This document shows positions 1,427 through 57,315 of a DNA stretch of 64,000 nucleotides, in pieces; position 1 is the first letter of the stretch, and each line of letters starts with the position of its first letter. This stretch comes from Haliotis rubra (taxonomy: Eukaryota), in contig NW_025767262.1 in assembly GCF_003918875.1 (NCBI RefSeq), forward strand, positions 1-64,000. The letters are read 5' to 3'. The position numbers were made by a program, and so were the translations under genes. The notes beneath the pieces were generated by a model. That model worked only from the letters and a program-made list of their open reading frames with translations. It was not told the origin of the DNA and made no database searches.

Positions 1427-4129
1427 CTATCTCTCAGTGAAGAAACTTGGAACATGTGTTTCACACAGGACACAAGGACAGCTGAGCACGACTGGGGCTG
1501 CTTCAATTCTTCACCAAGATCGATCTCACAACTCTGAGGACGGGCTCTGGGGGCAAGGACGGGGAAGGAGGGCAGGGTGTCGGCAGGGGAGAGGGGGTTG
1601 ACGGTGATCGTGATGACACCGGTGCTTACAGAGAGGAAACATAATTCTAAATCCACTGAAACCAGCATTGATGGACGGTTTAGTCAGACGGTTTGCACTA
1701 AGAAAACGTGGGAAAGTAAATTTCATATTTTGTATTCTATTGTATCGGGATATAAACAATTAACAAGTGAAGTATAGCACATTATGACATACATAAATAC
1801 AATTGACAAATCCATTTCTAAAATCACAAGAAATCTCTACAAAACACTGTTTACTGGATGATTCCCACAATGCTATAAGAATGTTTTTTCAGAGTCACTA
1901 CCAGAGGTATAGTGTTGTTTGTGTATTCAGGAGGGTAAGCAGTTTTATCATACATTTCAGAATAACAACTTCAGTTATGTACACGTGAGTGGTAGGAAAA
2001 TGTCATAACCCTATTGTGTTTTGTTGAAAAAGAGTACTGATCTGATTGTAAGAAGCTGGATTGTACTGAATAAATCTGCGTCAGGAATGTCTGGTGTCTT
2101 GTTGAATATTAGGAAATAGAATGGACATACCGACCACATGTCATGGACGCATTTACGTTGGAAACAAACTTCGTTTAATGTAGTTGAAAACGTCAAATGA
2201 CTATGTAAGTTGTTTATATTTATAACGTGGTTTTAAACATTATTATTTCATTATTTTTCTTAAACTCTACTTAAATTCCATAATTTTCTTAAAACAACGA
2301 CCGTAGTTACAACTGGTTCTCGATTACTTCTTTACAGAACACATTTAAACAACATGAACCCAAAGATGACCTAATACTGGATCAAGGACCGGAAAGTCTT
2401 TTGGGAGACAGGGCCGGGTAGGTCCTAAACTTGTGGAGATCGTCCACAGCTGGAATAAAATTAAACAGAAATACATATAAATATCAATCGACAATCAATC
2501 GATCCTCAACTCTATGACTTAATACACAGTGTAGGACGCATTGTTCATAGACTGTTGGCTTAAGATGGACGAAAGTTTATTGTAAGAATTCATGGTGATT
2601 TCTATTAGTTTGTTTTTGTTTTGTCACGAGGATAATCCAATTATACCAACGTTAAACGGTTCGGTGCTAGTTCCCTTTAGTAGAGGTAATATATACTTGG
2701 ACATGAAAGACAAAACTTTACCAGTACTCGTTCTTGACACCAGACTGAAATTACAGTCCGGTGAATGAAACCCTTTAAGACTCTTAATGAATAGGATATT
2801 TTATCAAAAGAGATATTATTCTAAAATATTCTACATACATTTAATCCCCTGGACGCCGATATATTTTTCTGACGCACATACTCCATAAGATCTCAAAAGT
2901 GAACATTGCCCAATATTTCGCCAGAAATGGTCATTGTTTTATGTAAACATTGTTCAAACTAACAAACAAAATTCAAAACAAAAATAACTTATCAGTCATC
3001 ATTCACGTGATATGATATTGAACAAAGAAATTAGTTTCTGCGTAAAAAAAATGCATTGAAAGATACTTGTGCTGCAGATGTGAATACTTAAATGTAGCTG
3101 GATAGGATTATCGTGTCTGCTTCTGACAACCGACCTTCACCTCCAAGAATTTACCAAATATGTACAATGGCAACAATGTTGACGCTACAACCAGTGACCG
3201 ATGTCTTACAAAATCACCGTCTTGCTTCTTCGATTCTAAGAATGGACTCTTCGCATTTACACATTACTTGGTACTGGTGACAAAGACCACTTAGTTTTTA
3301 TACTCAAAATGTATGAAGAAATTAAGTGATGTATAGCCTAATAGTCTTTTCATGACTGGTCCCAGCGTTGAAGAATGATTTTGTAAAACACAAGTCAGTG
3401 CGCAACAGAAAGCTCACTTTTGTCGTTGGTGTATTTCAAAATCATCGGTTTACATTGGTGATTTGAAGAAAAACTGATAACAGTGATCCACTAAAAACGC
3501 TAGTTTTGAAATTCCTAGTAATTATCTGATTTTCACATTTTCAATACATACAATGAAATAGCGACGTGAATCATAGTTTTGTAAATTGTCAAAAATGGCG
3601 ACAGGAAATGTCCCAACAAATTAAAATACTTTGAAGTGTATTTGTGTACGTGATATAGTTTGAACCTTATTCCGACTTCAAAGTGAAGTGCAAATAGTAG
3701 GGGAAGTTTTGTACTAGGGAGATGTTCCTCTCATAACCCATGCAGGTGATTATCTTGGGTAGGAGATCTGGAGAGACATGGATTTCCATGTACCTGGCCC
3801 ATTTCCATCATTTATCATAGTTATTCATGAAAAATAACATGGTTACAATTAATATCAATAACGAAAATCACCTTTACCTCTTTCTAAATGAATATGTCAC
3901 TCATTCCCTATCGACTGCAAATCGGAGAAGTACATAAAGTGTTCTGCTAATGAGTCAGTCACTAATAACTCAATCGTTACCAAATCTTCAGGACACGATT
4001 CAACTTTTGGAAAGCAACTATTTAAAGGCATCGCTAGCCGAAATCTACGATGAAAAAGCAAAAAATATCAACACAGACACCACTTCTATGATACCTTGTT
4101 TGATGGGCCAAAGCAACAGAAGCATACAT
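1427..4129 (-). pseudogene. Orphan three-exon gene family, copy A (disabled): exons 4129-4095, 2449-2378, 1624-1427
   Basis: Homologous to copies B and E. Exon 1 has +1 nt, exon 2 has two 1-nt deletions and exon 3 has further indels. The spliced frame stops early (MYASVALAHQTSCGRSPQV*). The X-box and 3'UTR element are retained. Confidence 0.8.
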
Positions 4130-4227
4130 CGTGCAGAACGTGAGATGCGTGCGGTATAAAAGAGCGAAATGCAAACCACTGGGTACAAAGCAGCAACAAC
4201 CAAAAATGGCGTCGTTTTAGAACATAG

Positions 4228-4241
4228 GTCTCCATGGAGAT
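4228..4241 (-). promoter_or_regulatory. X-box (RFX-type) palindrome, copy A
   Basis: GTCTCCATGGAGAT; on the minus strand ATCTCC AT GGAGAC fits the relaxed consensus RTHNYY WT RRNRAC. Confidence 0.55.
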
Positions 4242-4782
4242 CCGCCTGTAAACCGCTGCATTTCGCCCCTTCCGTAAACTGGGCAGCTCAATCAGACTGG
4301 CCTCGCGATCGGCCTCTTACTGTGCAGCCGCTAGCGAAGGGTGGGACACCAGCAGAGTGGGCCCTGAATTTTACAGTAAAATGCCAGCGAAACCTTCTCA
4401 GTCCACAAATGGATTTTCGCCAAATGTACAATTGTAGTGTTAATCTTGATTTCGGCTGGCGCAGCACCATATGCACGAAGAATTATATTCTGAACCTGTT
4501 TCTTTTAACGTTTTCAGCGTTTGTTTCACTCCATAAAAAAGTGGATTCAACACTCGGGAATAATATTTGGCTCTTCATCTAAGCTTCTGAAAAGATCAAT
4601 TTTGACCACTTATAGCTTACAGCAAAATATAGAAAGAATAACATTGCTGGACGCTGTTGGCTGATAAGCATATATCAATTTATGTGCTGCTTGATTTTGA
4701 TTTTGACATACGGTGACCGCAAACGTTGCCAAGACGCAGCAGCAAGTAGCAGATAATCTTTTATTAACAACAATCAGCTTTG

Positions 4783-4966: not shown

Positions 4967-5543
4967 GTAACTCATAGTGAAACACTGTGTATGTCTAAAA
5001 TAACAGCTAAGTCTTTGTTTTCTCGACAGTCTCAAACAAATCCGTCGTTGGTCCTGGCTCATGTCAGACGATGTTATCGCAAGGGGAGACCACTCGTTGT
5101 ATTAATCCTTTCATCGCCGTTTCGATCTCGAAATTTCTCTCCATTAACTCAAGAAGGTCTTTATGGAACCGTACATGGTGGATAAGCCAAACACGAAACG
5201 CTTATTGACAAGATTAAGCAACCATGATCAAATAGAAATCAGAAATATGATATTAAATATATAATTTGATCCAAAATATGTATGAAAACATAATATGAGT
5301 GTTAAAAGAAGATGGAAATTGACAAACACAACAGACGCATGCATTGTACATCCAGAAAATATCTGGTTTTGCAGCGAAAGGCACTTTCAGCACATTATTG
5401 GAATGCCTCAGGACAGCACCCTGCTTAACCCTACAGTGAAAAGAAGAAAACACCGACGGTTCGACCGCAAGACTTTTGAATAATATTGAAAGATATACCT
5501 GATGATAGTTCACACAACACTGGCACAGCAAACACATCCAAGT

Positions 5544-7360
5544 CTATCTCTGTGTGAAGAAACTCTGGAACATGTGTTTCACACAGGACACAAGGACAGC
5601 CGAGCACGACTGGGGCTGCTTGGATTCTTCACCAAGATCGATCTCCACAACTTGAGGACGGGCTCTGGGGGCAAGGACGGGGAAGGAGGGCAGGGTGTCG
5701 GGCAGGGAGTAGAGGGGGTTGACGGTGATCGTGAAGACACCGGGCCGCTTATAGAGAGGAAGAAGATTTTTTTGAATCAATGAAACAAGTATTTATCGAT
5801 ATTTCAATTAAATAGCTTGTATTAAGAAAATATGGGAAAGTCGACAATTTTAGACATTTGCACTCTGTTGTATCTGGGTATTTAAACAAAAAGTAAATAA
5901 AATTATACCATCTTCCAAAACATATAAATAGAAAAGACAAAATCATTTCCAAAATTATAAGAAATCACTAATAAAACAGAGTTCACTGAATGATTCCCCT
6001 ATGTTAAAAGCATGTAAAATAATGCCAGGATTTTCTTTGCTTGAAATGGGTGCTGATTTATTTGAAGCTTATCGAATATTTAATATTTTCCTGTAATAAT
6101 AGTTCTGGAGTAGCCAAACAATAAGTTTACGGAATATTCTAAATAGAGTTACAAAGCATACATATGTTTAATAACTCTGGCGTTGTGAATGTTAGTCCAG
6201 CAATCGAAATTGCCATAGTGTCCATATTTCATGACAAGTGTGTATTTACAAAGGAACAACATATTTCTGTCAATGGAATATGAGCTGTTAATTTCTTGGA
6301 AATTTGGTAGAGGTTCAGAAATGTTAGATTTGAATGTCTCTGGGTTGCATTTAACTTTCATAACACGCTACTAAAATCCATATTGTATTTTTAACTGTAA
6401 ACAGTATCTGCCTCTAACTGGCTGTGGATATTTCGACATTTTGGTGTGTTATTAAAACCAACAGGACACATTCAAACAGCTTGAACCTATCCATGACCTA
6501 CAGGATCAGGGACTGGGGGTGTCTGTTGGGAGACGGGGGCCGGGTAGGTCCTAAACCTGTGGAGATCGTCCAGAGCTGGAATGGAACAAAAACGGAAATA
6601 TATAAATGCACACATCAATCGACATGGTGACAGCTGTTAAGGTGGATCCTCATTTTTGACGACCTTATTCAATCAAATTATGCCAACCTTACTGGGTTCG
6701 GTGCCGTTGTCGAGGTAATGAGGTATTTTGACATGATATTGGGGCAGAAAAGACACGAGTTCCTCGACACCAGAACGAATAAGAAGTGTCTGTAAACTCT
6801 GAAAACCCCAGTGAATACGTTATTTCATGATGGAGTTTCTATTCTCCAAAACAACTTTGGGTAAGCATTGGATAGATCCCATAGACATGGGAAAGGGAGA
6901 CATGTAGTGTTATTCCCATTATTTATAAAAAAAAGATTATTATTATGCTTTATCACTGGAATCTGAATTGAAGAATATGAATTAATAACATATATCAGAC
7001 AGCTGTGAAATCAAAAAGGCATTTTACAAGCCTAAATAGAAAACAAAAAGAAGCGACATTATCCACACATTCAAATTCATGCACTTTCACTTCAAATGTG
7101 ACAAATACATTGAGAAAATGATATAGTTCATGAAAACAGACGAGGAACCCGCATTGTGCATGGCTTGTCTCTTCCTGCGTCTGTCAGTCGTTTCCTTAGA
7201 CATTTTATTGTCTTCAGGGCACGATTCAGCTTTGGGATACCATCCGTCAAAATTCATCAAAATGAAATCTACGAAATAAAAGGTAAAAAGCAAAAATAAT
7301 TGAATTCAGATACCACAACTAGATACCTTGATGATAGACCGAAGCAACAGAGGCATACAT
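5544..7360 (-). CDS. Orphan small proline-rich protein, copy B (103 aa): exons 7360-7327, 6575-6502, 5747-5544
   Basis: Canonical splice sites CAAG|gtat, ttccag|CT, CCT|gtaggt, ctataag|CGG give 34+74+204=312 nt: MYASVASVYHQALDDLHRFRTYPAPVSQQTPPVPDPRPGVFTITVNPLYSLPDTLPSFPVLAPRARPQVVEIDLGEESKQPQSCSAVLVSCVKHMFQSFFTQR*. The structure is conserved with paralog F. Confidence 0.85.
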
Positions 7361-7465
7361 CGTGCAGAACTTGGGATACGTGCGGGATAAAGAGCAAAAT
7401 GTCAACACAGACGTGGAAACAAAGTGCAGCATCAACAACCAAAATGGCGTCGTTTGTGTGTGAAG

Positions 7466-7479
7466 GTCTCCATGGAGAT
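7466..7479 (-). promoter_or_regulatory. X-box (RFX-type) palindrome, copy B
   Basis: GTCTCCATGGAGAT about 106 nt upstream of the ATG, next to a CGCCATTTT (YY1-like) motif. Confidence 0.6.
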
Positions 7480-8519
7480 CCGTCTCAGCGACCGTCGCCT
7501 CTCGTCCCTTTCCGTAAACTGGGTAGCAGTTACCTGAATGTTTACACTAGTCCGAGGACTCTGTTGTGCAACCGCAAGCGAGGGGCAAGGGTGCCACCTT
7601 AGTGTTAATATGTTTACGGTTACAAATGATGCATTCTGAAGCAGTAAACTGAAAAGAATTATATGGTTGGACGGTGGAAAGAGTATTTTCGTGCTGCCTG
7701 ATTTCAACATGGCTATCGCAGCTACCTTAAGATACAATCATCTTGTATAACTCACATAGAAATTCTGTGTATATCTGAAATAACAACAACCGTAGTATTA
7801 CGCCCAACAAGGGGCAATTATCATGAAAATATACATATTCCGTCGGGAAAGAGGGACAGTAAATCAGTATTAGATTCCTGGCCTACGTGTGATGGTGATA
7901 ACACAAGGGAGACCACTCCCATTGTATTGCTTTCTTACATAAACTAGAATTGTTCCATTCATGTCACTCTAGTGGTTACTAAACAAAAACGTGCGCCCAT
8001 TTCACACAGTATGCACTAAGTTGAAAAGCATGGAGCAAGTTGCTTAATTCCGTTAAAAAGGAATTTCAGACACCTCAACTCATTTTAGATCATGAGCAGT
8101 AACAATGTTAATTGTCTGACTTAAATATTACTGAGACAATTCTCTTTGAGAGGAGGAACGAAGTCTGTTCCTATACTCCCAACTTCAACAACAAAGGAAT
8201 TAAGCCCCTACTCCGCTAAGCTGACACACCTTGAAAGTGTAGCATAGTTGCATTCATGTCAGTCCAGTGGTCTCTAGACAAAACCCCGTGTCATTATTTC
8301 ACACAGTTTGCGCGAAGTTGAAAAGGATGGAGCAAGTACCATTACTCCATAAAATGACTTTCAGACCCCAATTGTCAAATACATTTAAGACTGAGAAGTA
8401 ACATCAACAGAGTACAATTTTAATTATCTGACTTAAATAGTTACTGGGAAAGTTGTTCTCATAGAGTTTCGTCCCTACACTTCCCGACCAACTTCTAAAA
8501 TAGGATAATAACTAAAATA

Positions 8520-8700
8520 GTATTGTAAGGATGCAGAGACCAGCTTACTCGTCGGAGCTGGCACCAATAAAGCATCGTTGGGATGTCCTTGGTCGAGGGT
8601 TGCGTTTAATCACCCACCTTCTATAAATCATAATCAGCTCATTAAGGTTCTCCAGAGTGGCAAGCTGTCCCCCAGGCAACTCAAGGAGACTTGTTATTGA
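8520..8700 (+). mobile_element. Tc1/mariner transposase C-terminal remnant
   Basis: Same segment as 39945-40136 (PAYSSDLTPVEHRWDVLGR). Confidence 0.65.
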
Positions 8701-8967
8701 AGCTTTTAACGAGAAAACAAACCAGACTCGGTATGAGTTTTCATTCTTTGCCCTTTCTCAGTCATCTCTTATTTCAGAAGCCGAGCCACGATTCTCAATT
8801 CACCTTAAAGAAGACGAGTTGCTTCCTCCTAAACCACACCTACTTGACCATGGCACTAATAAGCCAACTGAAGATTGTGGTAATGTAAACGTGAAGATAA
8901 TTCCCTTGTTACCCTTCATTTATGCATAGCTGACACTGATGTGTATTCTAAGTGCCCATTTAACTAA

Positions 8968-10307: not shown

Positions 10308-10871
10308 CTACGTCATATCCAAAAGGGTTGATGTTGGATTCTTGCAACGCTCTTTTTAAATTCCTACACTATGCTCGTTAAGGAGTCCAAAAGAAGTGTC
10401 GACCAAATTTACATGTATTTCATAAAATGTGTAAATTCATGATCCGTACTTCTTGTATTATCGATATTTCTGAATATAAGAGCTGGGTAATTGGGTAAGA
10501 AGCCGCACTGTGTAGGATGGATCTAACTGATGCAGCGAATCGAGACCTTCGGGCATTCATTTGTTGCCGAGCACAGGCTCAAGAAAATAACGCTGTTGTA
10601 ATTCCTCCTTAGGCAAGAATACATGCATACCTCTTCAACAGTAAATGAACACGAAGAAATCTGATGTTATATTTTCAGTGGATAATTGGCTTGGTGCACG
10701 GGGTTTTCATGGTGTAGGTGGAGATGAGTTATGTTAAGTAGTACTTTATCTATCTATCTCTATCTGTTTCTCTCTCACACACACACATACACAGACGCAG
10801 GTAAACATTCGGTGGGAGTAAAAGGTGCCGACAGGAATTGTGTATTTCAAATGTAAATAACGGCTGCGTCT

Positions 10872-12863: not shown

Positions 12864-13722
12864 AGGATCAGGGACTGGGGGTGTCTGTGCGGAGACGGGG
12901 GCCGGGTAGGTCCTAAACCTGTGGAGATCGTCCTGAGCTGGAATGGAACAAAAACGGAAATATATAAATGCACACATCAATCGACATGGTGACAGCTGTT
13001 AAGGTGGATCCTCATTTTTGACGACCTTATTCAATCAAATTATGCCAACCTTACTGGGTTCGGTGCCGTTGTCGAGGTAATGAGGTATTTTGACATGATA
13101 TTGGGGCAGAAAAGACACGAGTTCCTCGACACCAGAACGAATAAAAAGTGTCTGTAAACTCTGAAAACCCCAGTGAATACGTTATTTCATGATGGAGTTT
13201 CTATTCTCCAAAACAACTTTGGGTAAGCATTGGATAGATCCCATAGACATGGGAAAGGGAGACATGTAGTGTTATTCCCATTATTTATAAAAAAAAGATT
13301 ATTATTATGCTTTATCACTGGAATCTGAATTGAAGAATATGAATTAATAACATATATCAGATAGCTGTGAAATCAAAAAGGCATTTTACAAGCCTAAATA
13401 GAAAACAAAAAGAAGCGACATTATCCACACATTCAAATTCATGCACTTTCACTTCAAATGTGACAAATACATTGAGAAAATGATATAGTTCATGAAAATA
13501 GACGAGGAACCCGCATTGTGCATGGCTTGTCTCTTCCTGCGTCTGTCAGTCGTTTCCTTAGACATTTTATTGTCTTCAGGGCACGATTCAGCTTTGGGAT
13601 ACAATCCGTCAAAATTCATCAAAATGAAATCTACGAAATAAAAGGTAAAAAGCAAAAATAATTTAATTCAGATACCACAACTAGATACCTTGATGATAGA
13701 CCGAAGCAACAGAGGCATACAT
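12864..13722 (-). CDS. Orphan family copy B' (exons 1-2 only): 13722-13689, 12937-12864
   Basis: Splice sites are intact; encodes MYASVASVYHQAQDDLHRFRTYPAPVSAQTPPVPDP. It has no exon 3 of its own because the duplication starts inside intron 2. Confidence 0.6.
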
Positions 13723-13827
13723 CGTGCAGAACTTGGGATACGTGCGGGATAAAGAGCAAAATGTCAACACAGACGTGGAAACAAAGTGCAGCATCAACAA
13801 CCAAAATGGCGTCGTTTGTGTGTGAAG

Positions 13828-22329: not shown

Positions 22330-23977
22330 CTATCTCTGTGTGAAGAAACTCTGGAACATGTGTTTCACACAGGACACAAGGACAGCCGAGCACGACTGGG
22401 GCTGCTTGGATTCTTCACCAAGATCGATCTCCACAACTTGAGGACGGGCTCTGGGGCAAGGACGGGAAGGAGGGCAGGGTGTCGGGCAGGGAGTAGAGGG
22501 GGTTGACGGTGATCGTGAAGACACCGGGGCGCTTATAGAGAGGAAACATAATTTCTAAATCACTGAAACCAGTATTGATGGACAGTTTAGTCAGACGGCT
22601 TGCATTAAGAGATCTGGGAAAGTGGACAATGTTTTTTGGAGTAGACAAACAATAAGTTTACAGAATAGATTACACAATACCATACATACATGTTACAATG
22701 CATACTTATGGATAATAACTTTAGGGTTCTGGTGTTAGGATAGCAAAAACGTGCTGGAACATTGTGAAGGTTAGTACAATAATCGAATATAGAATTGCTA
22801 TAGTGAGCACATTTCATGAAATGTGTGTGTTTCAATAAGGAATATGACATATTACTGTCAGTGGAATATAAACTGGTAATGTCTTGGAAAATTAGTATTG
22901 ATCGGGATTTGGAAATGTTAGATATGTATGTGGTCTGTTGAGTTATTGATAATATGATTTTAAACTTTGTGTCTTTTTTTTATCAAAACTCTATTCCATA
23001 ATCGTCTTAATAACATAATTCCATGAAACTGGTTGTCGATATTTGTTATATTGCTCTAGCTAATGGGACAAACTCGAACAACTTGAACCTGAAGATGACC
23101 TACAAGATCAGGGACTGGGAGAGTCTTTTGGGAGACGGGGGCCGGGTAGGTCCTAAACCTGTGGAGATCGTCCAGAGCTGGAATGGAATTAAAAAGAAAT
23201 ATATAAATATACACATGGATCAACATAGTAGCAGGTAAATGCTCAATGAACAGAGCAAATACAACAGACAAATTGACTATTAGCTATCGCCGCAAATGGA
23301 GACCTGAGTTTAAATGTAAGAATCATGAGGATTTTTGTTGTTCGTTAATGCTATTTGTTTTGAAGAGTCTAATCAATCATCCTAACTTCACAGGGTTAAG
23401 TGTCAGTGAATTTATTCAATGTGGTATTTTGATATATTGGGGCAGAAAAAAACCCCTTTTCCTCGCCTTGACACCAGAGTGAATAAGAAACTAAAAATAC
23501 TTCCAATGAATACTGTTGTACTTTCTTTTATAATGGACGCTCTATTCTCAAAACATCTTGTTACATTTCAGTTAATCTTGGATAGATCCCATAGACATGG
23601 GAAAGGGAGATATAGATCTGCATGAAGAAGTTACTTCACCGAGATCATCAAAAAATGCATTTTAGAAGCCTTTGCAAAATAGAAGCGACATACACACATT
23701 CACTTCACAGACAGACAAAAAGAAAATGATCTAGCACTTGAAAGTAGACGAGGAACCTACGAAGTACATGGGGTGTCTCTTACTGCGTCTGTCAGTCATT
23801 TCCTTAGACAGGGTTAGTGTTACCAAAGCTTCACCACACGATTCAACTTTGGGATACAATCCGTCAAAATTCATCAAAATGAAATCTACGAAATAAAAGG
23901 TAAAAAGCACTAACAATTTAACATAGACACCACTACTAGATACCTTGATGATAGGCCAAAGCAACAGAGGCATACAT
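22330..23977 (-). pseudogene. Orphan family copy C: exons 23977-23944, 23177-23104, 22531-22330 (exon 3 frameshifted as assembled)
   Basis: Exons 1-2 are intact (MYASVALAYHQALDDLHRFRTYPAPVSQKTLPVPDL). Exon 3 is 202 rather than 204 nt because of two 1-nt losses in G runs, so this may be an intact gene with sequencing errors. Confidence 0.7.
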
Positions 23978-32605: not shown

Positions 32606-34344
32606 CTATCTCTGTGTGAAGAAACTCTGGAACATGTGTTTCACACAGGACACAAGGACAGCCGAGCACGACTGGGGCTGCTTGGATTCTTCACCAAGAT
32701 CGATCTCCACAACTTGAGGACGGGCTCTGGGGCAAGGACGGGGAAGGAGGGCAGGGTGTCGGGCAGGGAGTAGAGGGGTTGACGGTGATCGTGAAGACAC
32801 CGGGGCGCTTATAGAGAGGAAACATAATTTCTAAATCACTGAAACCAGTATTGATGGACAGTTTAGTCAGACGGCTTGCATTAAGAGATCTGGGAAAGTG
32901 GACAATGTTTTTTGGAGTAGACAAACAATAAGTTTACAGAATAGATTACACAATACCATACATACATGTTACAATGCATACTTATGGATAATAACTTTAG
33001 TGTTCTGGTGTTAGGATAGCAAAAACGTGCTGGAACATTGTGAAGGTTAGTACAATAATCGAATATAGAATTGCTATAGTGAGCACATTTCATGAAATGT
33101 GTGTGTTTCAATAAGGAATATGACATATTACTGTCAGTAGAATATGAACTGGTAATGTCTTGGAAAATTAGTATGGATCGGGATTTGGAAATGTTAGATA
33201 TTATAGATATGTATGTGGTCTGTTGAGTTACATTTATTATATGATTTTAAACTTTGTGTCTTTTTTTTATCAAAACTCTATTCCATAATCGTCTTAATAA
33301 CATAATTTCCATGAAACTGGTTGTCGATATTTGTTATATATGTTCTAGCTAATAGGACAAACTCGAACAACTTGAACCTAAAGATGACCTACAGGATCAG
33401 GGACTGGGAGAGTCTTTTTGGGAGACAGGGCCAGGTAGGTCCTAAACCTGTGGAGATCGTCCAGAGCTGGAATGGAATTAAAAAGAAATATATATATAAA
33501 TATACACATGGATCAACATAGTAGCAGGTAAATGCTCAATGAACAGAGCAAATACAACAGACAAATTGACTATTAGCTATTGCCGCAAATGGAGACCTGA
33601 GTTTAAATGTAAGAATCATGAGGATTCTTGTTGTTCGTTAATGCTATTTGTTTTGAAGAGTCTAATCAAATTATCCCAACGTCATAGGGTTAAGTGTCAG
33701 TGAATTTATTCAATGTGGTATTTTGATGTATTGGGGCAGAAAAAACCCTTTTCCTCCCCTTGACACCAGAGTGAATAAGAAAGTATAAAAAAATACTCCA
33801 ATGAATACTGTTGTACTTTCTTTTATAATGGACGCTCTATTCTCAAAACATCTTGTTACATGTCAGTTAATCTTGGGTAGATCCCATAGACATGGGAAAG
33901 GGAGACATAGATCTGCATGTAGTGTTATTTCCCATCATTCATCACAATTATCACTTACATGCTTTTTCACAGGATAGAACTAAAATTAATAACAGAAGTT
34001 ACTTCACCTAGATAATCAAAAATGCAGTTTAGAAGCCTTTTGCTAAAATAGAAGCGACATACACACATTCACTTCACAGACAAACACAAAGAAAATGATC
34101 TAGCACTTGAAAGGAGACGAGGAACCGACGAAGTACATGGGGTGTCTCTTACTGCGTCTGTCAGTCATTTCCTTAGACAGGGTTAGTGTTACCAAAGCTT
34201 CACCACACGATTCTACTTTGGGATAAAATCCGTCAAAATTCATCTACGAATTCTACGAAATAAAAGGTAAAAAGCACAAACAATTTAACACAGACACCAC
34301 TACTAGATACCTTGATGATAGGCCAAAGCAACTGAAGCATACAT
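32606..34344 (-). pseudogene. Orphan family copy D: exons 34344-34311, 33466-33393, 32807-32606 (exon 3 frameshifted as assembled)
   Basis: Exon 2 has compensating indels (YLALSPKKTLP). Exon 3 is 202 nt, with 1-nt losses in two G runs. Confidence 0.7.
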
Positions 34345-37010: not shown

Positions 37011-37208
37011 CTGGAGTAAAATATGAAAACACACACGCTTTCTTGAAAGAACAATGTTTACCATACACATCGAAAGTATATTATCATATGATTTTTAATC
37101 ATGTATGAAACAATATGTATATTATAGCCAAATAAGTCCAAAATGTTTGTCCGAAAGGTCCAAAAGCTATCAGTTCACACAACACTGGCACAACAAACAC
37201 ATCCAAGT

Positions 37209-38946
37209 CTATCTCTGTGTGAAGAAACTCTGGAACATGTGTTTCACACAGGACACAAGGACAGCCGAGCACGACTGGGGCTGCTTGGATTCTTCACCAA
37301 GATCGATCTCCACAACTTGAGGACGGGCTCTGGGGGCAAGGACGGGGAAGGAGGGCAGGGTGTCGGGCAGGGAGTAGAGGGGGTTGACGGTGATCGTGAA
37401 GACACCGGGGCGCTTATAGAGAGGAAACATAATTTCTAAATCACTGAAACCAGTATTGATGGACAGTTTAGTCAGACGGCTTGCATTAAGAGAACTGGGA
37501 AAGTGGACAATGTTTTTGGAGTAGACAAACAATAAGTTTACAGAATAGATTACACAATACCATACATACATGTTACAATGCATACTTATGGATAATAACT
37601 TTAGTGTTCTGGTGTTAGGATAGCAAAAACGTGCTGGAACATTGTGAAGGTTAGTACAATAATCGAATATAGAATTGCTATAGTGAGCACATTTCATGAA
37701 ATGTGTGTGTTTCAATAAGGAATATGACATATTACTGTCAGTGGAATATGAACTGGTAATGTCTTGGAACATTAGTATGGATCGGGATTTGGAAATGTTA
37801 GATATTATAGATATGTATGTGGTCTGTTGAGTTACATTTATTATATGATTTTAAACTTTGTGTCTTTTTTTTATCAAAACTCTATTCCATAATCGTCTTA
37901 ATAACATAATTTCCATGAAACTGGTTGTCGATATTTGTTATATGTTCTAGCTAATAGGACAAACTCGAACAACTTGAACCTAAAGATGACCTACAGGATC
38001 AGGGACTGGGAGAGTCTTTTGGGAGACAGGGGCCGGGTAGGTCCTAAACCTGTGGATATCGTCCAGAGCTGGAATGGAATTAAAAAAGAGATATATAAAT
38101 ATACACATGGATCAACATAGTAGCAGGTAAATGCTCAATGAACAGAGCAAATACAACAGACAAATTGACTATTAGCTATTGCCGCAAATGGAGACCTGAG
38201 TTTAAATGTAAGAATCATGAGGATTCTTGTTGTTCGTTAATGCTATTTGTTTTGAAGAGTCTAATCAAATTATCCCAACGACATAGGGTTAAGTGTCAGT
38301 GAATTTATTCAATGTGGTATTTTTAAATATATGTGGGCAGAAAAAACTCCTTTTCCTCCCCTTGACACCAGAGTGAATAAGAAAGTATAAAAAAATACTC
38401 CAATGAATACTGTTGTACTTTCTTTTATAATGGACACTCTATCCTCAAAACATCTTGTTACATGTCAGTTAATCTTGGGTAGATCCCATAGACATGGGAA
38501 AGGGAGACATAGATCTGCATGTAGTGTTATTTCCCATCATTCATCACAATTATCACTTACATGCTTTTTCACAGGATAGAACTAAAATTAATAACAGAAG
38601 TTACTTCACCTAGATAATCAAAAATGCAGTTTAGAAGCCTTTTGCAAAAATAGAAGCGACATACACACATTCACTTCACAGACAAACACAAAGAAAATGA
38701 TCTAGTCCTTGAAAGTAGACGAGGAACCGACGAAGTACATGGAGTGTCTCTTACTGCGTCTGTCAGTCATTTCCTTAGACAGAGTTAGTGTTACCAAAGC
38801 TTCACCACACGATTCTACTTTGGGATACAATCCGCCAAAATTCATCTACGAATTCTACGAAATAAAAGGTAAAAAGCACAAACAATTTAACACAGACACC
38901 ACTACTAGATACCTTGATGATAGGCCAAAGCAACTGAAGCATACAT
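37209..38946 (-). CDS. Orphan small proline-rich protein, copy E (103 aa): exons 38946-38913, 38068-37995, 37412-37209
   Basis: 34+74+204 nt with canonical splice sites: MYASVALAYHQALDDIHRFRTYPAPVSQKTLPVPDPRPGVFTITVNPLYSLPDTLPSFPVLAPRARPQVVEIDLGEESKQPQSCSAVLVSCVKHMFQSFFTQR*. Confidence 0.88.
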
Positions 38947-39051
38947 CGTGCAGAACGTGAGATACGTGCGGGATAAAGAGCAAAATGTCAACACAGACGT
39001 GGAAACAAAGTGCAGAATCAACAACCAAAATGGCGTCGTTTGTGTGTGAAG

Positions 39052-39065
39052 GTCTCCATGGAGAT
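39052..39065 (-). promoter_or_regulatory. X-box palindrome, copy E
   Basis: GTCTCCATGGAGAT about 106 nt upstream of the ATG. Confidence 0.6.
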
Positions 39066-39944
39066 CCGTCTCAGCGACCGTCGCCTCTCGTCCCTTTCCG
39101 TAAACTGGGTAGCATATACTGGATCGTTTAGACTGGTCCTCGGCCGCTGCTGTGCAGACGCTAGCAACGCTAGACGGGTTGCCAGCCTAGTATTAACAGT
39201 TCAATGCCGCAAAACCTTCCCAGCCGACAAACTCTTTTAGGCAAATCTATTATTTGTTGTAATAAAATCAGATTTTGACAAAATAGTATGTATTTTTATA
39301 CAATATTATTCGGAATATCAATATTTTAAATGTTTAGAGAAGAAAGGCCACCAACCAAGTAATCTGTTTTACAGCTGAATGCCATTAAATCTTCACAGTA
39401 CACAAATTCATGTCGCCATATATACTATTGTAGCATTAACACTAGAGTTTGGCAACTAAAGTTTCATCTGTTCAAAGTTTTCAGCATTTGTTTCACGAAG
39501 AAAAAAGAAATCATTCAGCACGGGGAATAATATTTACATCCATAAGAGAACAGTATGGCTACTTGTGTTTCATTCAGAAGCTAAAATACAGAAAAGAATT
39601 AAATGATTGTCACGTTAAACGTCGCGAAATGGGGACGGTAAATAAGTCTTTGGTTCCTGGCTCACGTCAGACGTTGATAGCACAAGGGGAGGCCACTCCC
39701 ATTGTATTGATGTCTTAGTTAAACTAGCATCGTAGTTTCTGAATCACCATTTCACACAGTGTGCACAAAGTTGAAAAGCATGGAGCAAGCACCTTAACTG
39801 CGTAAAAGGAATTTCAGACACCAATTGTTAAACTCATTTAGATCATGACAAGTAACAATGTTAATTATCTTACTTAAATAGTTACTGAGAAAATCCCCAT
39901 TGATCTCTGTTCGTATACTACCAACTATGAGGCGGGGGATGATA

Positions 39945-49920: not shown

Positions 49921-50084
49921 NNNNNNNNNNNNNNNNNNNNNNNNNNNNNNNNNNNNNNNNNNNNNNNNNNNNNNNNNNNNNNNNNNNNNNNNNNNNNNNN
50001 NNNNNNNNNNNNNNNNNNNNNNNNNNNNNNNNNNNNNNNNNNNNNNNNNNNNNNNNNNNNNNNNNNNNNNNNNNNNNNNNNNNN
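49921..50084. other. Assembly gap (164 N)
   Basis: Run of n. Confidence 1.
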
Positions 50085-50849
50085 ACACACACTAAAAAAA
50101 TTAATTGATACCACAATCTGAGAGTATTACAGGCCTTTTTATGAGCCCAAGAGATCATACTGACTGATAATAGTGTCAAACAAAATCAGTACTGGCTACG
50201 ATTTCAAATTATTCAGCTGCCTCCTCCTGGACTATTAGCACCAGACACAATATGGGCGACTTGCATTTCAATGACCATGTATAGAAAGATCGTTAATCTA
50301 ATGGCATTATGTTTGAGAATATGTGAATACAAAGCTTGATCATAAGGTAGATAATTGATAGCGTTTTTCAAAATTGTACTTTAAGTTGATTTACGGAAGC
50401 CTCGTGGTGCCTACATTTGATACCATAAATCATTAAAACAAAAATAGAATTGCACCTCTTATGCAGCAACTTCCAAAAGGAAACGGTTTTTAGATGCTGT
50501 TTGGTGGCGTTTTCACGATCTAACCAGTGTATTCGACATTGTTTCCGACTGTAGCCTATTCATGTAGATCGCTAAGCGGCCACTGCCGTACCGCATCACC
50601 CAATGTGTCGTTTGACGTTTCATATGTGCATATGAATTTCGTGCAGCACGTGCCCTACAGTCTCACTGGTTCACGGTGGACAAGAAGCCTATGATGAAAC
50701 GGCCTTGTTCTGGTTATAAAACTTGGATCGACTGTAGGAGGGCTGGTTGATGACTGAGTTGAGCGTTGGACCACTATATGCTCTGGGTATATGTTTTTCA
50801 CTCTAAACCACACGTCGTCGTTTTTGTTGAACGCAATAACTATAAGGTG

Positions 50850-51040
50850 CTGGTCTGTAAATAATAGAGTCTGGACAATAAAATCCAGTGATCAACAGCA
50901 TGAGCATCGAACTACCCAAATGGGATACAATGACGTGTCAACCAAGTCTGCGAGCCAGACCACCTGATCCCGTTAGTCGCTCTTACGACAAGCATGGGTT
51001 AGGCTACTGAAGATCAATTCTAACCCAGATCTTCACGGGT
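50850..51040 (-). mobile_element. SINE-like repeat family 2
   Basis: Family-2 body; shares its 5' flank with the 47551 copy. Confidence 0.8.
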
Positions 51041-52433
51041 ATGAGACTATCAAGTGACGAAGCAGACAATCCAATGACACGGTTTCGAGTTTGCTGATTT
51101 TGTAGAAATGCTTCTTCTAGCCCGGAGTTTTGTTGAAAAATCCCATCATAAATTTACGTACGTGTTTATAGTAGAGCTCTGAAACATCCAAAAGTACATT
51201 CGTACTCAGTACTGATATTGCTTATGCCTAGGTCACATATCCATTTTTACCATGAAAGATAAGTTTACGATGCCCGGTCGGGCTGAAAATCGGCAAAATT
51301 GAGAGATACCCGACGGGAACTGGACGATCATCGGCTGTTTTTGACATTGGAAAGACCGATTCTGTCGGGAATCGATCACTACTCGGATTGTTCCTGTTCG
51401 TTGTCCGTGCGAATAAACCAATCGGAAGGTGACCAACCATAGTCTGGACATGCATCGAGCAGGCGCCGCACGGGTATCCTTTAGACACTGGGAATCTTGA
51501 CGTGCCTGGTCCGGGGTATAAATAATGATCTGAATGGGTTGAGCAGTATATCAGGATGCCTGACCCACCACACTTGCTGAGACTGGCCCGGCTCTGTATG
51601 GAGTATGCCAGAGCCCCACACTTGCTGAGACTGGCTCTGTATGGAGTATGCCAGAGCCCGACACCGTCAGAATGTCATTCTAGCAGCGTTGTTGCAGGAA
51701 GAAAAGAGGGTGACAAGACTGGAGCAGCGTCAACGGCGGTGGTTGATCCGGCCTTAGCTGTTGCGTCGTCCCGAATACGGCCAGTTCAATAAGGGCAGAG
51801 TTACAGAGGGAAAAAATAAACAAACATCACTGCAGTTCAATAATTTTATAAGTGAATTTACTTTACTAAGAAATTGTAATCCCAAATATAACGTATGTTA
51901 CATTTGACCACTTTCTAAATGGCATTGCGTAATCAGACCTTTGAAACATGAGGTACATGTGCCCCGGGCATAAGACTGCAAACTGTCCCAGGAAGTCTGA
52001 ATGCAATAGATTGCCTAGATCAGGTACCGTTATCGATGAAAATGATGTAATTAGCGTTACCTAGCTGGCATTTCAAATCCATTGTAGGGGTGTTGGGGTA
52101 GGCTATTTGTTAGCGATTACTCGTTACACTGAAAACCCGGGTTTGATTCCCCAAATGGGTACAAGGTGTGACGGCCATTGCCATTGCTGGTGTCCAGCAC
52201 TTTTTGGGCGGAAGGTTGGGTGGAATAAGCTCTTTCGTCTCGTTGTGTTATCAAGAGTGACCTACGTTGGACAAGAGGACACACGGGGATTAATAATGAT
52301 ATGGCCCTCGAATAATGTTTCGGGTGTGTTGATGTGTTAGGTTTTGGTCCTGTTAAAACTGTTATATCTTTCTGATGACCGATCAGTATGACTTTTGGGG
52401 AGAGTATGTATGTAACACGAATAAATGGCGTAA

Positions 52434-53304: not shown

Positions 53305-53548
53305 ACCCGTGAAGGCCCTGGTTAGAATTGTTATCCAGTAACCCATGCTTGTCGTAAGAGGCGAATAACGCGATCGGGTGGTCAGGCTCGCTGACTTGGT
53401 TGACACATGTCTTTTCATCCCAATTGTGTAGATCTATGCTCATGCTGTTGATCACTGGATTGTCTGGTCCAGAATCGAGTATTTACAGGCCGCCGTCATA
53501 GAGCTGGAATATTGCTGAGTGCGGCGTAAAACTAAACTCACTCACTCA
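53305..53548 (+). mobile_element. SINE-like repeat family 2
   Basis: Full body with (actc)n tail. Confidence 0.85.
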
Positions 53549-53883
53549 GTGGCCAGGAAAATCATTTATACAGACATGAATGATAAGAATTATATAGAAG
53601 TCCTCATAACTCCATGCTTGTCGTAAGAGCCCACTGATATGAATCTGGTGGTTATTGCGTGTCACCGTTTCTCATGATATCTGCCATTGGTTATGTGTCC
53701 ACAACAGTTAGCTGGGATGTGAATTGCTGACCAAGGCCTTAAAACGAACTGCGTTCATTCCTGAATTGCCCATTCTGGTATTCTTCAAATTTACATTGTT
53801 AGTTGTTTTTATTATGCAATATTTTATTATAGTAATAGTCTTTCGTTGTCGAAGGCGCCGCTGTGCAGAGTTGCATCCATTAA

Positions 53884-54243: not shown

Positions 54244-54280
54244 TTTAAGCAAACTGTGATCGTGGGTTGAATCCTCAAGT

Positions 54281-54447: not shown

Positions 54448-55569
54448 GAGTCCTCAAGTTGTCCTTATTCTATTGGAACTACCATGACCGTGCTCGTGAG
54501 TTTCCCAAAGTGATAAAAGTCAAATACTTACAACAAAATGTTCCTGACAGATTAGGCTGACACGCCGTGAAACAAGTATAACATTGTTCAAAGTGACGTT
54601 AAATATCACTCACTCACTCACTCATTTACTGAATCTCCCTTTCATCCGCCCACTTATTTACTCTGTGACTCCCCCGCTCATTACAGTCATTACCATATCA
54701 ACAATAGTTATATTCATGCTATATAATATTACATTCGACTGCATAACACTGGCTAAAAAAAACCCTTCAGCATTATATGTTGGGACAAGCGCGCATATGT
54801 ATATCAGATGTACGATATTCTATTTCATTTTTCACCGAAAATGCATTCTTAAGTAATTTAGACACCAATCAAGATAATATGTATTGCAGATGCAATGTTG
54901 CAGAAAGGTTTCATTCACATTGTAAAAGCCGGAAGGTACAAACACCATGCGTAAAACAACATTCGATGGCATACAATTTCAAGTGGTAAATATATTTTAT
55001 AAGGAACAACTACCTCTAGTTCACAAGTGCCTTTAACACGGCACGCAGTGTACCTACTGGAAGAGTGGGCGGCAGTGCTAGCAAGCAAAAGGAAAGGCTG
55101 TTTCACGCCATACGTTGAAAGAGACCTCCAAAGACCAAGGGAGATTACTCTCAACTAAACACAAATCTCGAAAGCTCGGTCAAACGTCGTACTTATGGTC
55201 GACTTTTTAATCGCCCAAAACACCCAAATACGAGGGTTATTGGTTAAAAACAATTTTACATATAAATCAAGTGTTTAATCACACTTAAGAAGGACGAAGG
55301 AAATTAAATGATACTGATGTGATACCAGTGCATGTAAAGACAATTTAGTAAGAAAGTCAAATAAATATCCTCAGAAATCATCTTCTGAACTGGGCTCCGT
55401 TTGTGCAAATCGCAAGTTAACACTGCGCAGAAACATCCTAGCACTATTTTAAGAATCCACTCGAACGTTAGACCGGAATCTGAACGTATTTTTGTGATCT
55501 CTTCCAATCCATCGTAGGAACATGCGCGAACCAGTCTAAGACAGCACGAAATGTTGCGAGATTAGCAGC

Positions 55570-55583
55570 GTCTCCATAACAAC
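55570..55583 (+). promoter_or_regulatory. X-box (RFX site), copy F
   Basis: GTCTCC AT AACAAC fits the strict consensus GTHNYY AT RRNAAC. It lies about 108 nt upstream of the ATG and is followed by the conserved cacaaacgacgccatcttg. Confidence 0.65.
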
Positions 55584-55690
55584 CGTTGTCTAACACAAAC
55601 GACGCCATCTTGTTGTTTATTGCTGACGCAAATCTCACGACTCTGCTGTCATTTCGCTCTGTGTTCCTCACATCTGGTGAATTGTGCATC

Positions 55691-57315
55691 ATGTATGCTA
55701 ATGCTGCCAGGGTTTACCACCAAGGTATATTTCTGTGTTCTTTATATCCTCCGTTTTCTTTGTTTATGCTTTGAATTCCAATGTTCTAGTCTAGCCTAGG
55801 GTCACAAAAGATAATAAGTGATTCCCTGAACTTGTCTTCTGTATAAACTGCAATGTTTGTTAATCAGTAGTGGTGGTCCGACTAATTGAAATAATCGAGG
55901 ATTGGTCGCAGTGACCAAACGACCACGCAATCGATCACATTTTCTCATAATCGAACACAAACGACTTTGGAACTAGATTCTACTGTGTTGACGATGGAAC
56001 ATATCTCAGAAGTTGTCAGGGCCTGAAAACGTGTTTTAATCTTTAGAAAACTCACTTCAATTACTGAAAAGTCGGACTGAATATTTCTTGAGGACTCTGG
56101 GAGGTTTGTGTTCATGATATGTTAGTCATCCCTTTTAATAGGCAAATTGCATCAGTTTACATTGGATGTGGAATTTGCGCAATTTCTAAATATAAAACAA
56201 AACACAACAGAAAATCTCGTGTTTTTTTCTGTATACTTATGTGCATTAACAACCTGAACACGAACATCTGCAACCCAATGACGCTAACCATTTTTTTCGG
56301 TGATTGCACGCTGGTAATGAACCAATGATTAATTGTGAGAGTTCAACCAATTCCAAACACTATTAATCAATTGAATCAGAATACCCCGTTCCTGTTGGAA
56401 ACCTCTCTTCTGTAATACATGTTAGCGTAGCTTTCAGCCATGAGAGCCATGCTAAGATACACAATTACATGTCAGAGAGGTACACAAAGTATGTGATTTA
56501 GACTACCGGTTGTCCGACTTTCATTTTTTGTAAAGTCTTGGTGCCTCATTCTGTGTGTGTAAGATGGGACTCAGCCAAAAACTACTAAAATCTGTACCTT
56601 CGTAAGAAAGTGTAATCCCAATAGCCCATTACATAGACAATCAGATGGTAATGGGTGCCTGTTTTTGATGTTGTCGCCCCTGACAATTTCAAAGGACTGG
56701 GTTTATGGTACCTGTGTATGTCTAGACTTGTCATGAATCTCTGTATTTCCAATATTCTTAATTGCTTATTTTCCTTCCGCAGGTCAAGTCAAGCTCCACA
56801 AGAAAGTATCTCCTGTGCAGATGGTCTCCCCTACCTCTGCTCCTGCCTCCACTCCTGCCTCCGCCCCTGCCTCCATCCCTACCTACACTCCTGTCCCTCA
56901 TCCAGTAGGTTGTATGTAGTGACTACTTGAAAACACCACAAGGCTCCCTACATCCATGAACACCTTGAATTGTAACTTATTATTGTTCAATTATATAATT
57001 CTTTCACTAAAAGATAATTGTCCTATGTAGTTTTGTAGTTTACATGGTACATTGAGTGCTTTTTCTGCCTCTATGGTCCTTTGTTTTATGACTTAAAGAC
57101 TGGTTTCTGTCTCCCCTCTTAAGTGCCCCAATACTGAGTGGATGGTCCACATCAACCCCCTGTCTGTCCTGCCCAACCCCCTGACCTCTGTCCCAACCCC
57201 TAAAAGCACTGCCTACATGGAGATTGTTCTTGTGGACGAAGATGCCTTGAAACAGCCACGATCATGTGTGCCATCCTTGTTTAGTTTTCTCAAGAGTATC
57301 TTCACTGTGTGTTAG
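55691..57315 (+). CDS. Orphan small proline-rich protein, diverged paralog F (115 aa): exons 55691-55724, 56783-56904, 57124-57315
   Basis: CAAG|gtat, ttccgcag|GT, CCA|gtaggt, ctcttaag|TGC give 34+122+192 nt: MYANAARVYHQGQVKLHKKVSPVQMVSPTSAPASTPASAPASIPTYTPVPHPCPNTEWMVHINPLSVLPNPLTSVPTPKSTAYMEIVLVDEDALKQPRSCVPSLFSFLKSIFTVC*. Intron phases match B and E. Confidence 0.85.
55868..56362. mobile_element. hAT-like MITE in intron 1 of gene F
   Basis: Ends TAGTGGTGG...CCAAACACTA, flanked by 8-bp ttaatcag/ttaatcaa (7/8 TSD match). Confidence 0.6.

What the first reader, a model, noticed from the sequence alone, without database searches (positions are those of the whole stretch)
1427..57315. Hidden family of small three-exon proline-rich orphan genes: six-copy tandem array plus one inverted, diverged paralog
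Seen: three short blocks recur on the minus strand (copies A, B, B', C, D, E) and once, much diverged, on the plus strand (F). Joining them at canonical GT-AG sites gives open frames of 103 aa (B, E) and 115 aa (F). Both have a 34-nt coding exon 1, phases 1 and 0, and the same donor contexts (CAAG|gtat; CCW|gtaggt). Shared residues across E and F are MYAxxAxxYHQ, H[RK], PVP[DH]P, [VI]NPLxxLPxxLxSxP, EIxL, and KQPxSCxxxLxSxxKxxF, while the introns do not align. Inference: this is a real protein family under purifying selection, largely disordered, with a C-terminal Cys-containing amphipathic helix that could associate with membranes or be acylated. I recognise no named family, and single-exon ORF calling cannot see it.
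Basis: partly seen in the sequence, partly recalled or inferred. Interest (0 to 1): 0.9.

Follow-up and report, generated by a model that had tools for sequence, protein, structure and literature searches.

The report
Annotated abalone-only small gene family
The repeated blocks are real copies of a small three-exon gene found only in abalone, but the two best copies are already in NCBI's annotation of this genome as uncharacterised proteins, so the family is orphan and unstudied rather than hidden.

Summary
The window is Haliotis rubra scaffold QXJH01000564.1, bases 1-64000. It carries six minus-strand copies (A, B, B', C, D, E) and one diverged plus-strand paralog (F) of a 34-nt / 74-nt (122 in F) / about 200-nt three-exon gene with GT-AG introns.

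The family is not hidden. F (115 aa) is identical to XP_046543953.1, which is misnamed "WAC-like". Dozens of 103-aa relatives with the same exon structure are annotated in H. rubra, H. rufescens, H. cracherodii and H. asinina.

An exhaustive HMMER search of 1.84 billion representative proteins found no relative outside Haliotis. There is no hit in Pfam, in PDB sequences or in the ESM Atlas.

As assembled, only B and E are intact. C and D are broken only by 1-nt changes in C or A runs, in a Nanopore-based assembly. A is degenerate and B' lacks exon 3.

Purifying selection is real but weak: ML omega is 0.55, and omega = 1 is rejected at p = 0.0017. Pairwise values are 0.55-1.0, and the E-versus-F value is saturated.

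The protein models as two low-confidence helices flanking a disordered proline-rich linker. The assembly gap lies between E and F and touches no exon. It leaves only F's orientation and distance unverified. Function remains unknown.

The parts
1343..4287 (-). Copy A: a degenerate copy. Exon 1 is about 4095-4129 with a +1 nt change. Exon 2 is about 2379-2450 and is 2 nt short. Exon 3 is about 1444-1626 with several indels and an altered C-terminus.
5544..7360 (-). Copy B: intact 103-aa CDS. Exons are 7327-7360, 6502-6575 and 5547-5747, with the stop at 5544-5546. An in-frame upstream ATG would give the 127-aa form, identical to XP_046556572.1, which is annotated on scaffold QXJH01000995.1.
12864..13722 (-). 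Copy B': exon 1 (13689-13722) and exon 2 (12864-12937) only. Exon 3 is missing because the 6.36-kb B/B' duplication ends at 12597, inside intron 2.
22330..23977 (-). Copy C: exons 23944-23977, 23104-23177 and 22333-22531. Exon 3 shows no substitution against E, but two 1-nt deletions in C runs (near 22465 and 22454) break the frame.
32606..34344 (-). Copy D: exons 34311-34344, 33393-33466 and 32609-32807. Exon 2 has a -1/+1 pair of homopolymer changes. Exon 3 has two 1-nt deletions in C runs (near 32776 and 32730) and no substitution against E.
37209..38946 (-). Copy E: intact 103-aa CDS. Exons are 38913-38946, 37995-38068 and 37212-37412, with the stop at 37209-37211. This is RefSeq LOC124254107 / XP_046543935.1.
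38947..39120 (-). Conserved 5' leader and promoter of E; the same blocks precede B, B', C and D. It holds the palindrome TCTCCATGGAGA, the motif ACGACGCCATTTTGG (resembles a YY1 site; recalled from memory) and a conserved 93-nt leader.
37137..37161 (-). 3'UTR element GGACCTTTCGGACAAACATTTTGGA, about 50 nt after the stop. It is shared with F and with copies in all four species.
49921..50084 (.). Assembly gap (164 N) between the array and F. It lies outside every family exon and intron.
55560..55690 (+). F's 5' leader, with the same conserved blocks (GTCTCCATAACAACC, ACGACGCCATCTTG). Relative to its ATG they are read in a different frame than in E.
55691..57315 (+). Copy F: intact 115-aa CDS. 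Exons are 55691-55724, 56783-56904 and 57124-57315 including the stop. This is RefSeq XP_046543953.1. The 48 extra bases of exon 2 are an in-frame short tandem repeat at 56828-56893, which encodes the PAS(T/A) run.
57373..57397 (+). F's copy of the conserved 3'UTR element.

Best explanation
This is a tandemly amplified gene family that, in the protein libraries searched, occurs only in the genus Haliotis. Each gene is small and has three exons. The window is the first 64 kb of H. rubra scaffold QXJH01000564.1. It holds a compound array: a 6.36-kb B/B' duplication, C/D/E units of about 4.6 to 10 kb, and an older degenerate copy A. An old paralog, F, lies about 17 kb away across an assembly gap. 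Shown: the gene models are correct and are already in RefSeq. The product is about 103 aa (115 in F), has no known domain, and models as an N-terminal helix (2-21), a proline-rich disordered linker with conserved short motifs (LPVPDP; VNPLxSxPDP), an acidic patch and a C-terminal hydrophobic helix (84-101) containing the invariant QPxSC...L.S..K..F. The coding sequence evolves fast under weak purifying selection (omega about 0.55). Exon 3 is kept nearly identical among the array copies, which fits gene conversion or selection on the mRNA sequence. Promoter, leader and 3'UTR elements are conserved even between E and F, so these look like regulated transcription units. Inferred, at roughly 25% for this particular mechanism: the protein is a small disordered adaptor. 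Its C-terminal helix, perhaps S-acylated on the conserved Cys, would dock it to a membrane or a partner, and the linker motifs would recruit other proteins. The tissue of expression is unknown.
For: The same 34/74/201-nt exon structure with GT-AG introns occurs in 14 distinct intact 103-codon copies from four species. Only Haliotis proteins were found among 1.84e9 representatives, and the other hits are repeat artefacts whose best single stretch scores 4-5 bits. Nothing matched in Pfam, PDB sequences or the Atlas. E and F are homologous, BLASTP E = 5e-11. Exons are 85-93% identical between species, against 53-65% for introns and 72-78% for alignable intergenic DNA. Exons carry no indels, while 6-18% of intron positions are gapped. 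The GY94 codon model gives omega 0.55, with 2dlnL = 9.86 and p = 0.0017 against omega = 1. By region, omega is 0.40-0.58. AlphaFold2 places helices at 2-21 and 84-101. Leader and promoter blocks and the 3'UTR element are conserved across species and in F.
Against: No transcript or peptide evidence could be examined here. Pairwise dN/dS reaches 0.9-1.0, and differences show no third-position excess. The AlphaFold2 model has low confidence (mean pLDDT 56, pTM 0.17). The C-terminal helix has only a modest hydrophobic moment, and KD19 of 1.0-1.26 is below the usual 1.6 for a membrane span. F has no annotated ortholog in the other three species. The intact copies were picked by requiring a continuous exon-3 hit, which biases the claim of no indels. 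Gene conversion among tandem copies can distort the codon-model test.
Confidence: 0.8

Rival explanations
1. The true product is longer (126-190 aa). It would start at an upstream in-frame ATG in the conserved leader. The added hydrophobic N-terminal segment (PFWLLLLHFVSTSVLTFCSLS) would act as a signal peptide or membrane anchor, making this a secreted or membrane protein.
For: Many RefSeq models in H. cracherodii, H. rufescens and H. rubra carry this extension. The upstream frame is open for 57-113 codons in B, C, D, E, the L001 copy (H. cracherodii) and the L002 copy at 17176 (H. asinina), which is longer than the other two frames in each of these except the L001 copy (70 against 75 codons). 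The segment reaches KD19 1.75. The 12-nt length difference between the palindrome and the CGCCAT motif preserves the frame.
Against: E and C have no in-frame ATG anywhere in the open stretch. The H. asinina copy at L002:10001 has a 2-nt deletion and in-frame stops in the leader, yet keeps the leader sequence. F has a stop 38 codons upstream and no ATG, and it reads the invariant ACGACGCCAT block in a different frame. Several copies with an upstream ATG are nevertheless annotated as 103 aa. The block resembles a YY1 site (CGCCATnTT, from memory), which fits conservation as DNA or RNA rather than as protein.
Confidence: 0.12
2. The spliced RNA is the functional product, a long non-coding or regulatory RNA. 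On this view the 103-codon frame is incidental or barely constrained.
For: Substitutions are spread evenly over codon positions. Pairwise omega is 0.55-1.0. Synonymous divergence in exon 3 (about 0.09-0.11) is far below that of the surrounding non-coding DNA. The protein has no detectable fold or domain.
Against: Omega is significantly below 1 across 14 copies. All of those copies keep exactly 103 codons, while their introns differ in length by hundreds of bases. Every E/F length difference is a multiple of three (74 against 122 nt; 201 against 189 nt). E and F are recognisably similar as proteins but not as DNA within the coding exons. The start codon, the splice phases and, in the E-like copies, the stop position are conserved.
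Confidence: 0.08
3. Part of the apparent array is an assembly product. Some copies would be uncollapsed haplotypes or mis-joined contigs, and the frameshifts in C and D would be uncorrected Nanopore homopolymer errors. The true locus may therefore differ in copy number and have more intact genes. F's inverted orientation may also come from the scaffold join.
For: The assembly is a Nanopore/Illumina meta-assembly with a single Pilon round, RNA-seq scaffolding and haplotig purging (PMC6774278). The end of scaffold QXJH01000995.1 is 99.5% identical to the B region. All frame-breaking differences in C and D are 1-nt changes in C or A runs of four or more, and their exon 3 has no substitution against E although the units differ by 2.6-3%. 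The gap separates F from the array.
Against: C, D and E differ by 2.6-6% in substitutions, and B/B' by 1-3%. That is more than expected from pure duplication artefacts. Tandem arrays of the family are also seen in the chromosome-level assemblies of H. asinina, H. cracherodii and H. rufescens.
Confidence: 0.4

Closest known systems
RefSeq 'uncharacterized protein' models of Haliotis, for example LOC124254107, LOC124281973 and LOC124282061-63 (H. rubra), LOC124140157 and LOC124136285 (H. rufescens), XP_071083286 (H. cracherodii), XP_067684530 (H. asinina)
   Same: E is identical to XP_046543935.1. The relatives are 74-98% identical, are also 103 aa, and share the three exons and phases. They sit in tandem arrays on several chromosomes.
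   Different: Nothing differs, because this is the same family. None of these entries has a described function, a Pfam family, or a mention in the searched literature.
WAC (WW domain-containing adaptor with coiled-coil), the name NCBI gives F
   Same: The only resemblance is a low-complexity Pro/Ser/Ala/Thr run, which in F comes from an in-frame short tandem repeat in exon 2.
   Different: F is 115 aa and has no WW-domain hit and no other Pfam hit. Its real relatives are the 103-aa Haliotis proteins. The name is an automatic mislabel.
Fast-evolving, lineage-restricted abalone reproductive proteins (sperm lysin and sp18); recalled from memory, not tested here
   Same: Both are confined to abalone, arose by duplication, and diverge rapidly in protein sequence.
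   Different: From memory, lysin and sp18 are secreted helical-bundle proteins under positive selection. This family's conserved 103-aa form has no signal peptide, it is predicted to be mostly disordered, and omega is 0.55. No sequence comparison with them was made.

Membership tests
Haliotis LOC124254107-like uncharacterised protein family (RefSeq) | Protein sequence identical or highly similar to annotated members | tested here: met
   E is 100% identical to P0026 / XP_046543935.1 and F is 100% identical to P0005 / XP_046543953.1. B with its upstream ATG equals P0025. The profile search gives E-values of 1e-49 to 1e-54 to other members.
Haliotis LOC124254107-like uncharacterised protein family (RefSeq) | Three coding exons (34 nt; 74 nt; 201 nt plus stop), intron phases 1 and 0, GT-AG introns | tested here: met
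   The same boundaries occur in the window and in loci from H. asinina, H. cracherodii, H. rufescens and other H. rubra scaffolds.
WAC (WW domain-containing adaptor with coiled-coil) | N-terminal WW domain | tested here: not met
   hmmscan of F against Pfam at E up to 10 returns only a chance BcsO match (E = 1.3) and no WW domain.
Transposable element or TE-derived gene | TE protein domains, or a copy distribution typical of interspersed repeats | tested here: not met
   The family proteins and the ten longest window ORFs have no Pfam hits above threshold. The copies are spliced genes in tandem units rather than dispersed insertions. Terminal repeats were not searched for.
Tail-anchored or single-pass membrane protein | Hydrophobic segment of about 19 residues with mean Kyte-Doolittle hydropathy of at least about 1.6 | tested here: not met
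   The best 19-residue window is the C-terminus, at 0.97-1.26 in E, F, P0010 and P0004.
Secreted protein with N-terminal signal peptide | Hydrophobic core directly after the initiator Met | tested here: inconclusive
   The conserved MYAS start is followed by an amphipathic helix, not a hydrophobic core. A hydrophobic segment (KD19 1.75) exists only in upstream-extended models. Its frame or ATG is missing in E, C, F and one H. asinina copy. No signal-peptide predictor was available.
   A conserved palindrome sits about 115-130 nt upstream of the ATG in all copies and species. By eye, the E-like GTCTCCATGGAGAC has 3 mismatches to the consensus and F's GTCTCCATAACAAC has 2. No matrix scan or binding data were available.

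The most novel reading that the evidence does not exclude
The family could be an abalone-specific invention. Its exon 3 is held nearly constant at synonymous sites too, either by exon-limited gene conversion or by selection on the mRNA. All members, including the deep paralog F, share one regulatory cassette: an X-box-like palindrome, a CGCCATnTT site and a 3'UTR element. That would point to a single tissue programme, possibly cilia or sperm, for a new class of small disordered proteins.
Probability: 0.12. Interest if true: 0.45.

Novelty: already known. Interest (0 to 1): 0.15.

Why it matters
The finding was rated highly because it seemed to expose genes that annotation cannot see. Standard eukaryotic annotation already has E, F and dozens of relatives, so there is no hidden-gene discovery here. 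What remains is an ordinary but genuinely uncharacterised family: genus-restricted, tandemly amplified, fast-evolving and mostly disordered. It offers a modest case study in how young gene families are maintained. The points of interest are concerted evolution of one exon, weak protein-level constraint, and shared regulatory elements between old paralogs. It also gives two practical cautions. The RefSeq name of F ("WAC-like") is spurious. The frameshifts in copies C and D look like homopolymer errors in a Nanopore-based assembly.

Tried and rejected
Pfam, PDB sequence profiles and two ESM Atlas searches gave nothing above chance.

The three non-Haliotis hits of the exhaustive search were rejected. 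They are a Harmonia 'glutamic acid-rich' repeat protein and two other repeat proteins. Their scores are sums of 10-11 repeats of 4-5 bits each.

dS is saturated, and omega ranges from 0.07 to 0.87 depending on method.

A fold search was not run because the model is too poor (pLDDT 56) to give meaningful matches.

An NPxY motif (NPLY in E) was considered and dropped, because the Tyr is not conserved. SH3 class II, PP1 RVxF and CaaX motifs were checked by eye and are either not conserved or not matched.

The 187-aa ORF that runs from intron 2 into exon 3 of E (37209-37772) has no significant Pfam hit. No ORF of 120 aa or more is listed at the matching place in B, so it is treated as chance.

Literature searches for eleven locus or protein accession numbers found no paper. 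Rfam found nothing in the window. No ortholog of F could be found in the protein collections. Eukaryotic genomes cannot be searched at the DNA level with these tools.
Full report
**Source of the window.** The window's protein F was found letter for letter in the protein collection as XP_046543953.1 of Haliotis rubra. Its gene lies at bases 55691-57315 of scaffold QXJH01000564.1 in assembly GCA_003918875.1, the same numbers as in the window. E was found the same way at 37209-38946 of that scaffold. The window is therefore the first 64 kb of that scaffold of the blacklip abalone genome.

**Assembly gap (checked first, as asked).**
- The only N run is 49921-50084, 164 letters.
- It lies 10.8 kb beyond E's 5' flank and 5.5 kb before F's conserved leader, and is inside no exon or intron of any copy.
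- The gene calls stored for 27209-48946 and 45691-67315 list only E and F.
- The gap affects no reading frame. It does mean that F's inverted orientation and its 17-kb distance from the array rest on a scaffold join.
- The assembly paper describes a Nanopore/Illumina meta-assembly with RNA-seq scaffolding and haplotig purging (PMC6774278).

- Exon 1 is 34 nt in all three. Exon 2 is 74 nt (122 in F). Exon 3 is 201 nt plus stop (189 plus stop in F). Introns are GT-AG, with phases 1 and 0.
- tblastn and blastn recover all three exons for A, B, C, D and E, exons 1-2 for B', and F on the other strand.
- E and F are homologous along their whole length: BLASTP E = 5e-11, 33% identity.
- Their introns align at 45%, which is chance level. 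blastn links the two genes only through the 5' leader plus exon 1 and a 25-nt 3'UTR element.

**Anatomy of the array.**
- Self-comparison shows a compound structure.
- Blocks 6236-8967 and 9338-12598 recur at 12597-15325 and 15489-18703 at 97-99% identity (B and B').
- Units D (30789-35414) and E (35419-40025) are 96% identical over 4.6 kb, and C matches both at 89-96%.
- B' lacks exon 3 because its duplication starts inside intron 2.
- A has indels in all three exons and no intact frame across them.
- C and D are frameshifted as assembled and stop at codon 75.
- Every frame-breaking difference in C and D is a 1-nt length change in a run of four or more C or A.
- Their exon 3 has no substitution against E, although the units differ by 2.6-3% overall. 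About 5-6 substitutions would be expected in 201 nt.
- The assembly was built from Nanopore reads with one Pilon round, so these frameshifts are more likely assembly errors than decay. This is an inference.
- The end of another scaffold (QXJH01000995.1) is 99.5% identical to the B region. It may be a remaining haplotig or a continuation of the array.

**The family is not hidden.**
- E is LOC124254107 (XP_046543935.1) and F is XP_046543953.1.
- Searches with exon 3 and with a family profile found annotated relatives in four species:
  - H. rubra, at least nine, on four scaffolds;
  - H. rufescens;
  - H. cracherodii, more than twenty, on four chromosome-scale contigs;
  - H. asinina.
- In the loci fetched from those genomes I rebuilt 14 distinct intact copies. 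Each has exactly 103 codons and the same exon boundaries, while intron lengths range from about 550 to 1250 nt.
It also shows that ordinary eukaryotic annotation sees the family.

**Taxonomic range and known families.**
- A profile of the exon-3 domain (E, B, F and four relatives) was scored against all 1.84 billion representative proteins.
- Only the E-like cluster and F came back, plus three long repeat proteins.
- In those three, the best single stretch scores 4-5 bits, so they are artefacts.
- Pfam, PDB sequences and the ESM Atlas gave nothing.
- NCBI's name for F, "WW domain-containing adapter protein with coiled-coil-like", is not supported: F has no WW domain.
- F's Pro/Ala/Ser/Thr run is an in-frame short tandem repeat inside exon 2, at 56828-56893.
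- No paper in the library mentions any of eleven accession numbers of the family.

**Selection.**
- Pairwise Nei-Gojobori values are 0.32 for B/E, 0.55-1.0 between species, and about 0.6-0.7 for E-like copies against F.
- Differences are spread evenly over the three codon positions.
- A GY94+F3X4 model on the 14 distinct E-like sequences gives omega 0.55. It rejects omega = 1 with 2dlnL = 9.86, p = 0.0017.
- By region, omega is 0.47 (codons 1-36), 0.58 (37-77) and 0.40 (78-103). The tail has a 2.3-fold shorter tree than codons 1-36.
- Constraint on the protein is therefore real but weak. Gene conversion among the tandem copies could bias this test.

**An unexplained pattern.**
- Exons are much better conserved than their surroundings.
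- Between H. rubra and H. asinina, exon 3 is 93% identical, introns 53-65%, and alignable intergenic DNA 72-78%.
- This holds at synonymous sites too: dS in exon 3 is about 0.09-0.11.
- Within the window, B and E share exon 3 at 99.5% identity, while their introns are 68-74% identical.
- Gene conversion centred on exon 3, or selection on the mRNA sequence, would both fit. I could not separate them.

**Evidence for translation.**
- Omega is below 1 across the family.
- Frame length is invariant across copies, and all E/F length differences are multiples of three.
- The start codon and splice phases are conserved throughout, and the E-like copies also keep the stop position.
- E and F resemble each other as proteins where their coding DNA no longer aligns.
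- I put the non-coding alternative at about 8%.

**The upstream extension.**
- Many RefSeq models are 126-190 aa because an in-frame ATG lies in the leader.
- The extension would add a hydrophobic segment with KD19 of 1.75.
- The upstream frame is open for 57-113 codons in several copies.
- Against this reading:
  - E and C have no ATG in the open stretch.
  - One H. asinina copy has a 2-nt deletion and stops there, yet keeps the leader sequence.
  - F reads the invariant block ACGACGCCAT in another frame and has a stop.
- I read the leader as conserved 5'UTR and promoter DNA.
- It contains a 12-nt palindrome, TCTCCATGGAGA, and CGCCATnTTG. The second motif resembles a YY1 site; that resemblance is from memory and was not tested.
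By eye it has 2-3 mismatches to the textbook consensus, so I leave that open.
- A 3'UTR element about 50 nt after the stop is conserved in copies from all four species and in F.

**The protein.**
- AlphaFold2, run with the family alignment, gives helices at 2-21 and 84-101 and nothing else. Mean pLDDT is 56 and pTM 0.17.
- The Atlas model of F has pLDDT 0.40.
- The C-terminal segment is moderately hydrophobic (KD19 1.0-1.26, below a membrane span) and modestly amphipathic (muH 0.14-0.41).
- Invariant residues cluster in MYA, PxP, NP, and QPxSC...L.S..K..F.
- My working mechanism is a small disordered adaptor docked by its C-terminal helix, possibly through S-acylation of the conserved Cys. It is an inference held at about 25%.

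**Verdict.** The sequence observation is right and the gene models are right. The claim of a hidden family is wrong, because the genes are already annotated. The claim of purifying selection is only weakly true. This is an already catalogued, uncharacterised, abalone-restricted gene family, and I rate its interest as low.

Noticed in passing
window 479-628 (-): This stretch matches the alternative last exon (FRYIN...DTDKYRI...) used by H. rufescens isoforms X3 and X5 of LOC124140157, at 45% identity and E = 3e-6. It lies downstream of copy A, so some copies may splice exon 2 to a different 3' exon.
   Followed up: partly
window 10868-11115, 16993-17239, 26029-26268, 41018-41268, 42097-42309, 47548-47797, 50840-51043, 53305-53551, 58219-58410, 60024-60272: An interspersed repeat of about 200-250 bp occurs on both strands. 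It is also present many times in the H. cracherodii and H. asinina loci at 70-86% identity, so it looks like a SINE-like element shared across the genus.
   Followed up: no
window 45615-46047: A very regular 29-bp tandem repeat: 14.9 copies, 97% matches.
   Followed up: no
window 19064-19362 and 29670-29856: A G-rich minisatellite (unit about GGGAAAGGGTTG) recurs in two places of the array, inside the homologous blocks 18337-19736 and 28853-30227.
   Followed up: no
window 38947-39120 (-) and 55560-55690 (+); also L001, L002, L006-L008: The promoter and leader blocks are conserved in all copies of four species and in F: CAGTTTACGGAAAG, the palindrome TCTCCATGGAGA, ACGACGCCATnTTG, and CACGTCTGTGTTGACATTTTGCTC. 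Their factors are unknown.
   Followed up: partly
L005 (QXJH01000995.1, last 14.7 kb): The end of another H. rubra scaffold is 99.5% identical to window 5503-8217 and 86% identical to window 14-1884. It may be a surviving haplotig or the continuation of this array beyond the scaffold start.
   Followed up: partly
L006 17641-19110 and L007 2178-4650, 18365-20700: Intact 103-codon family copies are present in H. cracherodii and H. rubra loci but do not appear in the stored list of called genes for those loci.
   Followed up: no
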